A DNA stretch of 64,000 bases from Ylistrum balloti (taxonomy: Eukaryota): NCBI RefSeq assembly GCF_031769215.1, contig NW_026782393.1, forward strand, positions 434,001-498,000, read 5' to 3'. Position 1 is the stretch's first letter; each line of letters begins with the position of its first letter. Position numbers and translations under genes: made by a program. The notes beneath the pieces are model-generated. The model saw only the letters and a program-made list of their open reading frames with translations, was not told the DNA's origin and did no database searches. This document shows, piece after piece, positions 53 to 3,931 of the stretch.

Positions 53-1418
53 TGAAGTAAAGTAACTGCTCCAAAATTCATTTCAGAGCGGAGGAAATAC
101 AACCGGTACCGCAGACATCTTGAAATAAGTAAATAAATAAATAAACCAGTACTATTTTTCGCGCGGTGACACATTGAATTGACCTCTGTATATTGACATT
201 CATAATAAAATGTTTCCATTTTTCATTGTAGATCGTAAGCTAGTAAAATGTTAAGATCTTAGGAGAAGATTTAAGAAGACTCTGGAAACGATTTTTCCCA
301 ACGAAACATACTCTAACCTTGTCTTAAGGTTTCCAATACAGAATAAAGTTCCAAATATAACGGAATCATAGTTTTATTGTACAAACTGTGCCAGTGCCAG
401 GAAACAAATTAACTTCATAGTTAAATGGATCATTATTCTGTACTATCGACATGAGGCACATCTTTTGTGGGCCAGAATTAAAGGTAATACGTATGGATGT
501 CACACCGACTCTCTAGAATCTAATAAGCCCACAGGAGGACGACATTCGGTAACATATTTTCAGTAAAAGATATCATGATTATGTTAGTTATATAGTACGA
601 TTTCTTTAGAAAATCATGATTTAAGACGGGACAAAAGACACACAAATGAACACATTTTAATACAATTTTAGAGTAAGATACAGCCAAACGATTGATTAAA
701 CTGCATAACAGCTATGTCGTTCTTTTAGGCTAAGGGCCGATTATTGAAGTCTAGGAAGCAACGGAGAAAATCCTTAGGGATCGGAAGAAACTAAAAAAAA
801 AAAAACTAGACAGGAGGTGCAATAAAAGAATAAAAAGATCTTTCAAATATCAGATAATTTTAGAACAGCGTTAAGCAAATGTGTATATTCTGAGCCGTGC
901 CACTATTCGAATGAATTAAAACGTGACATGCAGGATACGGCAAACTCCAGGGACTACAAGCAGTGCCTATCACTTGCTATATCTAAAATATTGTACAAAA
1001 GACACACAAGTAAATACGATAACCCCTATGTAGCTAAGTAATGATAAAAATATAATAATTCAAGCTTATTCTACCGATAACTGTAATATTAGTAAACATT
1101 CTGATAAGATAATCATTTTGATATACTGGTTATTCGGTTTTAGTTCTAGTTATAATCGTAGTATACTTATGATACTTCCAGCAAACTAATAATCCAAGTT
1201 AATTGATATCCCTAATATATTCAAAGCCCTAGTGCATGGACGTTTGTTTTCCTTATATGGATATGTACATACTCCATGTTTTATTTTCTTGGTACTTGAC
1301 TATTTTGCGCCACATATCTTTTATTGTTTGGTTTTTCTACTTTATTTATTTCTATATTTTCATCATAGTTTATTCCAGATGCAAAGACATGAATAAGTAA
1401 TCATAAAAACAGACTTAC

Positions 1419-1978
1419 GTCTTGTTTGCCATCAACGAACGAGTAGAAAATGTGAATGGTACCACGTCCATCGAACCCAGGCAAAGATTCTTTTTCGAAC
1501 ACCTCGACCATGTGACCTTTTGGCTGCACCCCTCTGACTATTCCGTAGACAACGTTACAAATAGGACATACTGGTTTAACACTGAAGCTATTTTTGGCAC
1601 ATGGCAGACACAGAACATGATGGCACTTGTTTAACTCCGTCCTTTCCTTTAGATCAATCTTTTCTAAACAAACTGGACAGTTTTCATCTGCTGGGTAACT
1701 CTTTACCATCTGTGACTTTACTGAATATCTTTCCATAAACGATTCATCCTCTCGTGTTTCTTTTTTCTCTGTTCTAAAATGGTGATTATGTTTCACTTCC
1801 GGTACAGAGTGAAGTTGTAGGCGCGTGATGACACTTTGAATTGTTTTGACAACACTTCGGTCAGGATGGACGATGTAAAGCATTCGTACACAGGGATTGT
1901 CTGCAGGATTTACGGAAAACTTCTGGATCTGCGTACATAGAAGGTCGATGACAAAATCCCTAGAGGCACCATTTCGTC
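1419..1978 (-). CDS. DTX3/DTX3L-like E3 ligase, coding exon 2: end of macrodomain, RING-HC finger and start of the Deltex C-terminal (DTC) domain
   Basis: Acceptor ttttcacattacag (AG 1980-1979); donor GAC|gtaagt (GT 1418-1417); 560 nt, phase 1 to phase 0. C3HC4 RING CPVCLEKIDLKERTELNKCHHVLCLPCAKNSFSVKPVCPIC, followed by DTC-type YGIVRGVQPKGHM and SLPGFDGRGTIHIFYSFVDGKQ. The rest of the DTC domain was not found in 1-1418, so it presumably lies left of the window. Confidence 0.9.
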
Positions 1979-2139
1979 CTGTAATGTGAAAACATATCAG
2001 ACATATGTATATTCCAGTACGCTTCATCCCACACGCTCGCCAACCCCGACATAATTCCCACATTAATTCAATTAGGGGGTCAAAACAGTTTATTTATTTA
2101 TAGTTTATTTATTTAGGGACTCACTCTCGTCTGACTTTT

Positions 2140-2330
2140 GGAAACGTTGCATTCTCCCTTCACTAACGTAGGTGTCTAGGGTTCGATTTCTAGAAAGGTA
2201 GAGACTATATACCACGTTCGACCACGTGTGTTTTCCACAATTAGTTTCCTCACAAAGTTAGACCCTCTTACGCTTCTACACGGAGCAACAAGAGAGGTTA
2301 ATATAAATTGGCAGTCAAACATCAGTGATT
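2140..2330 (+). mobile_element. Decayed tRNA-derived SINE-like fragment in the DTX-like intron
   Basis: B-box-like gggttcgatttc (~2178-2189) followed by a body resembling mollusc SINE cores (recognised from memory, not searched). Confidence 0.4.
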
Positions 2331-2691
2331 GACTTCTAGGATTCTGAATGGAAAGGAAAACCGTGAGGATGACATGGCTAAATAGCAGTTAGACGTTTCA
2401 AGAAAGGAAGAACCCAGCAACCAAGAACAAATTATTATATACCGGAATATATTCATTCCAGGTTATTTTCGCCCTTGTTCCATTATACACGAATTCGCCT
2501 CATGTTAATTGCGTTCACTAAGAATTATATAAAAAGGTGTAACAAATATTTGACCCTCTCCCCCATCTTGAATTCGCCTTCCCTTTCATGGACGAAAAGG
2601 GCAAAAAATATTAAAAATGCCCCTGTATACAGTGCTCTGCGTTTCATCAGTACAGTCAAACACTTAATTACAGAGTTATAAATTGATTTAC

Positions 2692-3931
2692 CAGTGCCAA
2701 GAAGTGGAATCGCCATAGAATTGAATCCCAGACAGTCGACCCGTTTCAAAAGTCTGCACAAGGCTTTGCTAAAATATTGACACCATGCGTCCTGGTCTAC
2801 TTCCCTTATCTTTGGAATGTTAATATGTGCCACGTTCTTACACTTCAATCTGCCTGCTCCGGGCGTGAAGATGAAATGCCAGGGTTTCAAAATCCCAATC
2901 ATGTTACTTGCTACCAGTTTTTGCTCTTCATATTTTTCACCTCCCTTGTGTGCTAGGTTTTTGGCCACCATACCAAACCCTTGAAGTGATTCATCCTCAC
3001 TCGACACGACAATGTCCACATCCAAATTTGCCATATCGCATTCTGTCGTGTTTACGCACAACTTCCATACAGGTGTCTTGGGCTTTGCCCCGTTATGATC
3101 GTTGGATTCTGCGGATCTGTTCAGAAAATTAACGGAAGCAATACTTCCGCTATGTCTATTTCCGCCTTGTTCATTTTCCTTGGATTTTTTATCTACGCCG
3201 GGTTGTTTGGATTCATACCCAGGAACACGTATTTCAGGACTTTCTGTCGTGCTGTGTTCAGTAACGCTGGCTATATCTTCATCTTCAGTTTCTTTCGGTC
3301 CTTTAAGGTCATACACAGGGACAACCACTCCGCGTTTCCCAGTCTTGATTGGGTCAGTATTTCCGGGTGTATCTTCGACGTAAGCATCTTTCGAGACTTT
3401 GAGATCAATCAACCTACTATTTCCCGACAGGTTCGGTTCAGTTAATCCAGATTTTACTCTGGCTTCGTGTCCTTCCGAATGATTTGGCTCGTGCTTGGTA
3501 TCGGCTTCCGTACTGGTATTACATTCAAACTCATTTTCGTTTGCTTTTTTCTGACCAGTCGTTATACTGCTATCTAGCGTGTTGCATGGTGTTATGCTGG
3601 ATTTGCCTTCAATTTCTGTCTCTTTCGATCTCGTTGGGTCATGCCCAAAAGTAATCTGTACATAATTTCCTATCGGGGTTTTTGCAATATTCTTCGATTT
3701 AACTTCAACTTTGGTTTCATGACCAGGAGTAATTTTTAAACTCCTTCCAAATGTGTTTTCTTTTGTCTTGCTGGAATAATCTTTTGCTGATTGTTGGTTG
3801 CGTCGAACCTGTTCAACACCCGGACATGTTTTGCTGTACCCGTTTTTCTTCTTCACCAATACAGAAAGATATGAAGTTTTTTTGCTCTTTGTTCTCTGCA
3901 CATCCTTTTCTGGCAAATTTTTACTTGCCAT
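2692..3931 (-). CDS. DTX3/DTX3L-like E3 ligase, coding exon 1: long low-complexity N-terminus plus macrodomain
   Basis: ATG 3931 has an in-frame stop just upstream and a tag/cag acceptor at 3960-3955 (5' UTR intron). Macro-like motifs DIVVSSEDESLQGFGMVAKNL, FTPGAGRLKCKNVAHINIP and SMAIPLLGTG. Donor ACT G|gtaaat (phase 1) joins in frame to the exon starting at 1978. Confidence 0.85.

What the first reader, a model, noticed from the sequence alone, without database searches (positions are those of the whole stretch)
1419..3931. Single-chain macrodomain-RING-DTC protein: an ADP-ribose reader fused to a Deltex E3 ligase
Seen: the two exons splice in frame into about 600 codons with a disordered N-terminus, a macrodomain, a C3HC4 RING and the start of a Deltex C-terminal domain. 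Known: vertebrate DTX3L has no macrodomain and gets macrodomains in trans from its partner PARP9, and Deltex RING-DTC modules can ubiquitylate ADP-ribose. Inference: this gene hard-wires reader and ligase in one polypeptide. The macrodomain looks non-hydrolytic, with VSSED in place of the NAAN motif and GTGRNG in place of the GIF/YG loop.
Basis: partly seen in the sequence, partly recalled or inferred. Interest (0 to 1): 0.72.

Follow-up and report, generated by a model that had tools for sequence, protein, structure and literature searches.

The report
Scallop macrodomain-RING-DTC (DTX3L-like) ubiquitin ligase gene
This is a real, intact scallop gene for a Deltex-type ubiquitin ligase that carries its own ADP-ribose-reader-like macrodomain, but this fused layout is common in invertebrates and already annotated, so it is an ordinary member of a known family.

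Summary
On the minus strand, window 3931-2692 and 1978-1419 are two coding exons that join in frame. Two more exons lie 126-343 and 1269-1344 bases before the window start. All three introns are GT..AG.

The spliced product is letter for letter the 697-aa NCBI model LOC132557215 of the scallop Ylistrum balloti. It has a poorly conserved, probably disordered N-terminus (1-284), a macrodomain (~292-475), a C3HC4 RING (514-554) and a complete Deltex C-terminal domain (563-694).

- **Macrodomain:** it folds confidently (pLDDT 88.6) and is closest in structure to macroH2A1.1, then PARP14 and PARP9 macrodomains. SSED replaces NAAN and GTGRNG replaces the G-hydrophobic-aromatic-G loop. By a published rule this predicts a reader, not a hydrolase.
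- **RING-DTC:** it is most like DTX3L, and the catalytic His and Glu are kept.

The architecture is not new. Macro-RING-DTC proteins are annotated in many molluscs and a sponge, and Atlas clusters are labelled Cnidaria and Nematoda. This genome has at least five further loci of this kind. A 2026 preprint says DTX3L lost its macrodomain when PARP9 arose.

No RNA run was available, so splicing rests on homology. ADP-ribose binding and ligase activity are inferred. The scan's index held no other note on this family. Interest is low to moderate.

The parts
2692..3931 (-). Coding exon 1: start codon, N-terminal low-conservation region (residues 1-284) and the first two thirds of the macrodomain (to Thr413, plus the first base of Gly414).
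   Evidence: Translation. Macro hit on this exon alone at 27.8 bits. Donor G|gtaaat. Gene model check. An in-frame TGA lies 7 codons upstream of the ATG (read).
3080..3931 (-). Coding for residues 1-284: K/S/E/T-rich, probably disordered N-terminus. Only the first ~30 residues (KKTSYLS..KKK) are shared among the four scallop (pectinid) proteins.
   Evidence: 73% polar, charged, Gly or Pro residues against 52% in the macrodomain. Identity to orthologs is 7-23% with many gaps. No Pfam family. Four of the 5 nonsynonymous differences in the second DNA data set fall here; the fifth (S493L) is in the macro-RING linker.
2692..3058 (-). Macrodomain, N-terminal part (residues ~292-413), including Asp299, Val-Asp306, the invariant Ser310-Ser311-Glu312-Asp313 (NAAN position) and Gly320.
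1979..2691 (-). Intron 1 (713 nt, GT..AG). It splits the macrodomain inside loop 2, within the Gly414 codon (GTG|RNG).
   Evidence: The joined sequence aligns without a gap to orthologs, including a transcript-like contig.
1419..1978 (-). Coding exon 2: end of the macrodomain, linker, RING, and first 38 residues of the DTC.
1794..1978 (-). Macrodomain, C-terminal part (residues 414-475): loop 2 GTGRNG, the helix DFVIDLLC and the strand YIVHPD.
1689..1793 (-). Linker (residues 476-510), predicted disordered.
   Evidence: AlphaFold2 of residues 285-697 gives pLDDT below 50 for residues 473-493 and 501-509, and 50-70 for 494-500. Identity to orthologs is 9-52%.
1545..1688 (-). C3HC4 RING finger (residues 511-558). 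Zinc ligands are C514, C517, C532, H534, C537, C540, C551 and C554.
   Evidence: Pfam zf-RING_2 at 513-555. All eight ligands are invariant in 10 orthologs.
1419..1532 (-). Start of the Deltex C-terminal domain (residues 563-600). The remaining 94 DTC residues, plus the last three residues and the stop, are encoded by exon 3 (C536:433874-433657, 126-343 nt before window base 1) and exon 4 (C536:432731-432656, 1269-1344 nt before window base 1).

Best explanation
**What it is.** This is an intact four-exon gene of the scallop Ylistrum balloti (NCBI LOC132557215). It encodes a 697-aa Deltex-family E3 ubiquitin ligase whose RING-DTC catalytic module is of the DTX3L type. The module is preceded in the same chain by a poorly conserved, probably disordered N-terminus and by one macrodomain of the macroH2A1.1/PARP14 kind.

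**Where it sits in the family.** It belongs to an orthogroup shared by scallops and mussels. That orthogroup lies inside a widespread invertebrate Macro-(Macro)-RING-DTC family, which is the form of DTX3L that does not depend on PARP9.

**Proposed mechanism.**
1. A PARP mono-ADP-ribosylates a target. The genome encodes several macro-PARP-like loci that could do this.
2. The macrodomain binds that ADP-ribose without removing it. It is held to the ligase by a flexible linker of about 35 residues.
3. The RING recruits E2~Ub.
4. The DTC pocket positions an ADP-ribose 3'-hydroxyl next to His662 and Glu688. Ubiquitin is then transferred onto the ADP-ribose, or onto nearby lysines.

**Shown versus inferred.**
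- Shown: gene structure, domain content, the macro fold, conservation of the catalytic and zinc residues, and distribution of the architecture.
- Inferred: ADP-ribose binding by the macrodomain, lack of hydrolase activity, ligase chemistry, and any immune or stress role.
For: **Gene model.** Four exons with GT..AG introns give a product identical to the NCBI protein.

**Domains.** DTC scores 189 bits at full length, Macro 34.8 bits (cut-off 22) and the RING is present.

**Macro fold.** AlphaFold2 gives pLDDT 88.6 and pTM 0.84. Foldseek's best match is macroH2A1.1 (E 9e-15, TM 0.75/0.82, rmsd 2.0 A), followed by PARP14 macro1/2, PARP9 macro1 and YmdB. The orthogroup profile scores 54.7 and 50.5 bits against PARP14 macro1 and macro2.

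**Purifying selection on the macrodomain.**
- It aligns without a gap over 184 residues in all orthologs.
- 36 columns are invariant, including SSED, Gly320 (aligned to macroH2A1.1 G224, whose G224E mutant appears in papers on ADP-ribose and macroH2A1.1 found) and loop-2 Gly412/Thr413/Gly417.
- The one exonic difference inside the macrodomain in a second DNA data set is synonymous. All 5 nonsynonymous differences fall in the N-terminus or linker.

**Reader rather than eraser.** Loop 1 has Asp in place of Asn/Ser, and loop 2 has Arg-Asn in place of the hydrophobic-aromatic pair required for hydrolysis. The tree places the domain outside the clade of catalytic-like NAAN/G-I-F macrodomains, across a branch with 96/92 support.

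**Ligase module.**
- The best solved relative is DTX3L DTC (E 3e-54).
- Identity to vertebrate DTX3L is mostly 49-57%.
- His662 and Glu688 align with DTX2 His582 and Glu608, the residues needed for ADP-ribose ubiquitylation.

**Expression of the architecture.** Ortholog P0006 sits as an uninterrupted 768-codon ORF on a 3-kb Logan contig of run SRR23320462, which looks like a transcript.

**Candidate writers.** PARP catalytic exons lie next to macro exons on contigs C842, C182, C141 and C146.
Against: - No RNA data exist for this species in the index, so the 2692/1978 junction rests on GT..AG sites, on gap-free homology and on the NCBI model.
- No ligand binding or activity was tested.
- The acidic residue that contacts adenine in other macrodomains (macroH2A1.1 Asp203, mapped by my own count back from G224) is not fixed in the orthogroup. 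That column reads D, E, G or S, with an acidic residue one or two positions away.
- The invariant Glu312-Asp313 pair has no counterpart among the solved macrodomains and paralogs I aligned here. It could mean a different ligand or chemistry.
- The position of this macrodomain relative to the 'second macro' clade of the paralogs is unresolved (89/64 support).
- An immune role is only an analogy with DTX3L/PARP9/PARP14.
Confidence: 0.8

Rival explanations
1. The macrodomain has lost nucleotide binding altogether. It would then serve only as a structural or protein-interaction module, and substrate recognition would rest on the DTC pocket alone. macroH2A1.2 and macroH2A2 are macrodomains of this kind, by my own knowledge.
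For: - The Pfam score is weak, 34.8 bits against about 89-107 bits for the first macrodomains of paralogs in the same genome.
- All four NAAN positions are replaced.
- The adenine-contact acidic column varies within the orthogroup.
- macroH2A1.2 and macroH2A2 structures are also close Foldseek matches, at ranks 19-20, 28 and 34.
Against: - The pocket-lining elements are the most conserved parts of the domain: invariant SSED, Gly320, Gly330-Gly331 and Gly412-Thr413..Gly417.
- Loop 2, GTGRNG, nearly copies the GSGRNG of ADP-ribose-binding macroH2A1.1.
- Every ortholog keeps an acidic residue within two positions of the adenine-contact column.
Confidence: 0.2
2. The macrodomain is an active hydrolase that uses a non-canonical acidic pair, Glu312-Asp313. 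The protein would then both write ubiquitin and erase or trim ADP-ribose or ADP-ribose-ubiquitin marks.
For: - Glu312 and Asp313 are invariant from scallops to mussels and sit at the position of the catalytic Asn.
- PARP14 macro1 and PARP9 macro1, which are hydrolases, are among the closest sequence matches.
Against: - It fails the published residue rule at both loops.
- It lies outside the catalytic-like clade in the tree.
- Its loop 2 matches the non-hydrolytic macroH2A1.1.
Confidence: 0.12
3. The locus is a mispredicted or decaying gene. The two ORFs would be adjacent by chance, or be remnants of a pseudogene, and no single macro-RING-DTC protein would be made.
For: - There is no RNA evidence for this species.
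- Five of six exonic differences between the two DNA data sets are nonsynonymous.
- Some paralogous DTC hits in this genome carry stops inside the six-frame match.
Against: - A 2094-nt ORF is intact across four exons with canonical splice sites.
- Every junction aligns residue for residue with orthologs from other scallops and mussels. Their DTC is 66-83% identical and their macrodomain 33-62%.
- The nonsynonymous differences avoid all folded domains.
- An ortholog is present as a transcript-like uninterrupted ORF.
Confidence: 0.03

Closest known systems
Vertebrate DTX3L-PARP9 heterodimer
   Same: The RING-DTC is of the DTX3L type. The best solved relative is DTX3L (3pg6, E 3e-54), and identity to bird, reptile, amphibian, fish and mammalian DTX3L is mostly 49-57%. 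Like DTX3L, it has Arg at the DTX2 Ser568 position and an aromatic residue at the His594 position. Both systems combine macrodomain reading with DTC-based ubiquitylation.
   Different: Here the macrodomain is in cis and single. DTX3L obtains two macrodomains in trans from PARP9. No RRM or KH-like DTX3L N-terminal domains (PF21717, PF21718, PF23222) are detected. No PARP catalytic domain lies in the protein or on the contig.
Invertebrate Macro-(Macro)-RING-DTC proteins (predicted, uncharacterised), in molluscs and a sponge, with Atlas clusters labelled Cnidaria and Nematoda
   Same: The domain order is the same and the DTX3L-like RING-DTC is the same. This genome has at least five more such loci, on C312, C118, C672, C254 and C341.
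   Different: Most paralogs carry two macrodomains. The first has the catalytic-like signature NAAN plus G-[ILV]-[FY]. This orthogroup has one macrodomain with SSED and GTG(R/K)NG, a short linker to the RING and a long disordered N-terminus.
DTX1/DTX2/DTX4 (WWE-WWE-RING-DTC) and RNF146 (WWE-RING)
   Same: An ADP-ribose or poly-ADP-ribose reader is joined in one chain to a RING ligase. The DTC His/Glu pair is conserved.
   Different: WWE domains bind iso-ADP-ribose.
macroH2A1.1 and PARP14 macrodomain 2 (non-hydrolytic ADP-ribose readers)
   Same: The fold matches (TM 0.74-0.85, rmsd 1.7-2.5 A). Loop 2 (GTGRNG) resembles macroH2A1.1's GSGRNG, and the strand IVHPD resembles PARP14 macro2's LLHPS. 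The glycine aligned to macroH2A1.1 G224 is kept.
   Different: Sequence identity is only 19-25%. Loop 1 begins with an invariant Ser-Ser-Glu-Asp that neither has. The protein context is an E3 ligase, not a histone or a PARP.

Membership tests
Deltex family E3 ligases (RING-DTC) | Full-length Deltex C-terminal domain above the Pfam gathering score | tested here: met
   PF18102 scores 189.1 bits (cut-off 25) over residues 563-694, covering profile positions 2-133 of 133. phmmer to DTX3L, DTX2 and DTX1 structures gives E 3e-54, 4e-43 and 4e-41.
Deltex family E3 ligases (RING-DTC) | RING finger with eight zinc ligands directly upstream of the DTC | tested here: met
   The ligands are C514, C517, C532, H534, C537, C540, C551 and C554, all invariant in 10 orthologs. 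zf-RING_2 scores 28.2 bits against a cut-off of 27.3. The DTC begins 8 residues after the last RING cysteine.
Deltex family E3 ligases (RING-DTC) | His and Glu required for ubiquitylation of the ADP-ribose 3'-hydroxyl (DTX2 His582 and Glu608) | tested here: met
   His662 (WNDVHHKT) and Glu688 (EEELAAKG) align with them. His662 is invariant. Glu688 is kept in all orthologs except one model with an aberrant C-terminus.
Deltex family E3 ligases (RING-DTC) | E2-dependent ubiquitin transfer to ADP-ribose or ADP-ribosylated substrates | not testable with these tools
   This needs an in vitro ubiquitylation assay.
DTX3L orthologs in the strict (tetrapod) sense | N-terminal RRM / KH-like D1-D3 domains that mediate oligomerisation and PARP9 binding | tested here: not met
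   P0001 has no hit to PF21717, PF21718 or PF23222, which are listed for most vertebrate DTX3L hits.
DTX3L orthologs in the strict (tetrapod) sense | RING-DTC closer to DTX3L than to DTX1/2/4 | tested here: met
   187 bits to DTX3L against 151 and 144 bits to DTX2 and DTX1, although the DTX3L chain lacks the RING. No rooted tree was made.
Macrodomain (PF01661) | Sequence match above the gathering score | tested here: met
   34.8 bits against a cut-off of 22, residues 313-423.
Macrodomain (PF01661) | Three-layer alpha/beta/alpha macro fold | tested here: met
   The AlphaFold2 model has pLDDT 88.6 and pTM 0.84. Foldseek finds 272 PDB matches at E<=0.001. The 50 best shown are all macrodomain chains, or carrier fusions and designs built on them, and the top one is macroH2A1.1 at TM 0.75/0.82.
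Macrodomain (PF01661) | ADP-ribose binding | tested here: inconclusive
   The pocket glycines and loop 2 are conserved and resemble macroH2A1.1. The adenine-contact acidic column varies, and all four NAAN positions are replaced.
ADP-ribosylhydrolase macrodomains (MacroD, PARP14 macro1, viral Mac1 type) | Asn/Ser and Gly flanking loop 1, and a hydrophobic-aromatic pair in loop 2 (rule in PMC10221186) | tested here: not met
   The Asn/Ser position is Asp313 and loop 2 reads Gly-Arg-Asn-Gly. The domain lies outside the catalytic-like clade.
Macro-PARPs (PARP9/14/15) | PARP catalytic domain in the same protein | tested here: not met
   P0001 has no PF00644 hit. No PARP exon lies anywhere on contig C536.

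The most novel reading that the evidence does not exclude
The invariant Ser-Ser-Glu-Asp that replaces NAAN in this scallop-mussel orthogroup may not be mere decay of a hydrolase site. It could be a new recognition or catalytic motif. For example, the macrodomain could be tuned to bind or process the ubiquitin-ADP-ribose hybrid mark that its own DTC writes. The protein would then be a self-contained writer-reader, or writer-editor, of that mark.
Probability: 0.1. Interest if true: 0.65.

Novelty: new member of a known kind. Interest (0 to 1): 0.27.

Why it matters
Ubiquitylation of ADP-ribose by Deltex ligases was shown only in the last few years. How the mark is targeted is still studied mainly through the two-protein DTX3L-PARP9 complex.

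A natural single-chain version could be a convenient minimal system for asking how macrodomain reading and DTC writing cooperate. This one is short, has one reader-type macrodomain about 35 residues from the RING, and is conserved from scallops to mussels. It also documents the pre-PARP9 state of DTX3L in a lophotrochozoan.

The architecture itself is already in public annotation and has been noted in a preprint. The gain is therefore an additional, well-delimited example and an orthogroup-specific motif, not a new principle.

Tried and rejected
**RNA evidence.** The look-up of sequencing runs (kind rna) on all four exons plus introns returned one run of unrecorded kind. When laid, its contigs run straight through the introns, so it is genomic DNA. 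The few 'joints' lie in a high-copy repeat in intron 2. It gives no support for or against splicing.

**Word-index search, exon 1 alone.** It found only the protein itself. This was an effect of the length window (227-723 aa), not of rarity.

**Word-index search, macro region of the full protein.** It found only scallop relatives: two of the orthologs already seen and a macro-only 481-aa fragment. The mussel orthologs came in through the RING-DTC search.

**Assigning the macrodomain to the paralogs' first or second macro.** Motifs favour the second. One paralog's second macrodomain has VSSQD, LLGTGK and IVHRD. The tree leaves this unresolved (89/64 support), so I do not claim it.

**Adjacent PARP partner gene, as with DTX3L-PARP9.** There is none on the contig.
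- The 10 kb downstream holds no ORF that looks like a gene, only tandem repeats and short ORFs that I did not scan.
- The next gene upstream is a Cys-loop receptor.

**Two-domain AlphaFold2 model.** It gave pTM 0.69 with a disordered linker. Without coordinates or an error map I draw no conclusion on macro-DTC contacts.

**Literature.** I found no functional study of any macro-fused Deltex.

**Searches not used.** I did not run the exhaustive representative search, because the claim does not rest on absence of relatives. No complex prediction was run, because no protein-protein binding is claimed.
Full report
**1. What is in the sequence**

The window is G000:C536:434001-498000. The matching NCBI protein names the species, Ylistrum balloti.

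On the minus strand an ORF starts at the ATG at 3931 and runs to a donor site...ACT G|gtaaat, at 2692. An in-frame TGA lies seven codons upstream of that ATG. A second coding block starts behind acag| at 1978 and ends at CAA GAC|gtaagt at 1419.

Scanned separately, exon 1 hits Pfam Macro (27.8 bits, cut-off 22). Exon 2 hits zf-RING_2 (30.6 bits) and the first 37 positions of DTC.

The gene does not end in the window. A six-frame search of the assembly with the DTC family found the remaining DTC on the same strand just before window base 1. I read the splice sites there.
- Exon 3 is at C536:433874-433657.
- Exon 4, with the stop codon, is at C536:432731-432656.

A script joined the four exons. 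It found GT..AG at all three introns and a 2094-nt ORF. The product is identical to P0001, the 697-aa NCBI model 'uncharacterized protein LOC132557215 [Ylistrum balloti]'.

**2. Domains**

Pfam on the whole protein:

| Domain | Residues | Score |
|---|---|---|
| DTC | 563-694 | 189 bits, full length |
| Macro | 313-423 | 34.8 bits |
| zf-RING_2 | 513-555 | 28.2 bits |

*N-terminus (residues 1-284).*
- It has no family hit.
- It is 73% polar, charged, Gly or Pro residues.
- It is 7-23% identical to orthologs, with many gaps.
- Only the first ~30 residues are shared among the four scallop proteins.

This fits a disordered region and supports the chosen start codon.

*Macro fold.* AlphaFold2 on residues 285-490, with 36 related macrodomains as alignment, gave pLDDT 88.6 and pTM 0.84 with the expected strand-helix order. 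Foldseek's top PDB matches are macroH2A1.1 (E 9e-15, TM 0.75/0.82, rmsd 2.0 A), then macroH2A1.2, YmdB, PARP14 macro1/2 and PARP9 macro1.

*Macro to DTC.* A model of residues 285-697 (pLDDT 76.9, pTM 0.69) predicts the stretch between macro and RING (residues 473-509) to be mostly disordered.

**3. The macrodomain pocket**

By sequence the domain is about equally far from PARP14 macro1 and macro2, macroH2A1.1, PARP9 macro1, PARP15 and YmdB.

*Loop 1.* VDIVVSSEDESLQGFG lines up with PARP14 macro1 VDVVVNASNEDLKHYGG and macroH2A1.1 SDAVVHPTNTDFYIGG. So SSED sits on NAAN. Gly320 sits on macroH2A1.1 G224, whose G224E mutant appears in papers on ADP-ribose and macroH2A1.1.

*Loop 2.* GTGRNG matches macroH2A1.1 GSGRNG, and IVHPD matches PARP14 macro2 LLHPS.

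*Hydrolase rule.* A published analysis of macro-PARPs states that hydrolase activity needs Asn/Ser and Gly flanking loop 1 and a hydrophobic-aromatic pair in loop 2. It found that only macro1 of PARP9/14 meets this (PMC10221186). This protein has Asp313 and Arg-Asn.

*Doubts about binding.* The column aligned to the adenine-contacting Asp (macroH2A1.1 Asp203 by my count back from G224) reads D, E, G or S across orthologs. An acidic residue always lies within two positions. PARP14 macro2, which was crystallised with ADP-ribose (3q71), has the same shifted arrangement. I rate ADP-ribose binding likely but unproven.

**4. The ligase module**

The best solved relative is the DTX3L DTC (3pg6, E 3e-54), ahead of DTX2 and DTX1.

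I mapped DTX2 numbering through the 6y22 chain. The offset of 387 is consistent for four named residues:

| DTX2 residue | This protein | Note |
|---|---|---|
| His582 | His662 | proposed catalytic residue for the ADP-ribose 3'-OH (PMC7615817) |
| Glu608 | Glu688 | proposed catalytic residue (same source) |
| Ser568 | Arg648 | Arg in DTX3L too |
| His594 | Phe674 | Tyr in DTX3L |

The last two positions confirm the DTX3L flavour. All eight RING zinc ligands are invariant in orthologs.

**5. Relatives and distribution**

A search with the RING-DTC region returned 145 proteins at E<=1e-10.

*Proteins that carry Macro+RING+DTC.*
- Other scallops: Mizuhopecten, Pecten and Argopecten, 72-77% identical in this region.
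- Mussels: six Mytilus species.
- Oysters and pearl oysters, clams, Solemya and a freshwater mussel.
- Two gastropods.
- The sponge Oscarella.
- One EukProt transcript.

*Vertebrate DTX3L.* It follows at mostly 49-57% identity and lacks the macrodomain.

*ESM Atlas.* It holds Macro+RING+DTC clusters whose commonest labelled phyla are Mollusca, Cnidaria and Nematoda. These labels are leads, not a checked census.

*Orthogroup.* An HMM of this macrodomain separates a tight group scoring above 300 bits from everything else at 57 bits or less. The group holds four scallop proteins, six Mytilus proteins and one unlabelled transcript. Within it the macrodomain aligns gap-free with 36 invariant columns, including SSED.

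*Paralogs.* Most other mollusc members have two macrodomains.
- The first has NAAN and G-[ILV]-[FY], the catalytic-like signature.
- The second is degenerate.

*Tree of macrodomains.* A maximum-likelihood tree recovers the orthogroup (100/99), the catalytic-like clade (93/90) and most second macrodomains (94/90). A branch with 96/92 support keeps the orthogroup outside the catalytic-like clade. Its relation to the second-macro clade is unresolved.

*This genome.* Macro exons lie upstream of DTC exons in the same orientation on C312, C118, C672, C254 and C341, so there are at least six such genes. PARP catalytic exons sit beside macro exons on C842, C182, C141 and C146. These are candidate macro-PARP writers. 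None lies on C536.

**6. Is it expressed and functional?**

No RNA run of this species is indexed. The only run that holds the stretch is genomic DNA, because its contigs pass through the introns.

Indirect support:
- All splice sites are canonical.
- Every junction aligns residue for residue with orthologs.
- Ortholog P0006 is an uninterrupted 768-codon ORF on a 3017-nt Logan contig of run SRR23320462, across positions where this gene has introns. That looks like mRNA.
- Of six exonic differences between the two DNA data sets, the five nonsynonymous ones (N30K, P86L, V91A, V202M, S493L) fall in the N-terminus or linker. The only one inside a folded domain is synonymous.

**7. Comparison with what is known, and novelty**

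- DTX3L has no macrodomain and pairs with PARP9 (PMC10955461 abstract).
- RING-DTC modules ubiquitylate ADP-ribose (PMC7615817).

But the principle of a cis reader plus RING-DTC is already general. Ahmed et al. note that four of five human Deltexes have a second ADP-ribose-binding device, either tandem WWE domains in cis or a partner (PMC7442474).

The specific macro fusion is also known. It is annotated in public databases for many invertebrates. [quoted passage not shown]

I found no functional study of any macro-fused Deltex. The scan's own index held no other note on this family in this genome.

I therefore file this as a new member of a known kind. The modestly new element is the scallop-mussel orthogroup with a single SSED-type macrodomain and a short linker.

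**8. Verdict**

| Question | Verdict |
|---|---|
| Observation | confirmed, and extended to a complete four-exon gene |
| Biochemistry | untested |
| Interest | 0.27 |

Noticed in passing
window 620-1016 (inside intron 2 of the gene): An interspersed repeat. A DNA search of the assembly found more than 40 copies on other contigs at 67-86% identity. The DNA run's contig depth rises from about 12 to about 1000 over window ~765-960. This is probably a SINE- or MITE-like element.
   Followed up: partly
L019:9088-9957 (C536:431488-432357, about 300 nt downstream of the gene's stop) and L019:1-2535 (C536:422401-424935): Two tandem-repeat arrays, seen as periodic ORF translations. One has a unit of about 8 aa, or 24 nt (YYRCYLIL). 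The other has a unit of about 15 aa, or 45 nt (TVIQTQTQLNWSYLL). Apart from these arrays, the 10 kb downstream shows only a few short ORFs (80-94 aa), which I did not scan.
   Followed up: no
G000 contigs C312:750461-756807, C118:129280-135801, C672:36084-40848, C254:647949-652942, C341:1191215-1196122: Five further loci where Macro exons precede DTC exons on the same strand. Three of them have two macro exons, and the first scores 89-106 bits. This is a lineage-expanded Macro-Macro-RING-DTC family. Some hits carry stops inside the six-frame match, which may be introns or decay.
   Followed up: partly
G000 contigs C842:113712-148166, C182:510714-536765, C141:989815-1048686, C146:1225929-1231795: Clusters where PARP catalytic exons and several macro exons lie together. 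These are candidate PARP14-like macro-PARP genes, possibly tandemly duplicated on C842 and C141.
   Followed up: no
L016 3341, 4368, 4928, 5260, 5275, 5442 (window 1741, 2768, 3328, 3660, 3675, 3842): Six exonic single-base differences between the assembly and the contigs of the one public DNA run. Five are nonsynonymous, and all of those lie in the N-terminal region or the macro-RING linker. One is synonymous, inside the macrodomain.
   Followed up: yes
P0005 (Argopecten irradians ortholog): The public name 'DNA ligase 1-like' given to this ortholog is probably a low-complexity artefact of its K/E-rich N-terminus. Its Pfam content is Macro + RING + DTC.
   Followed up: partly
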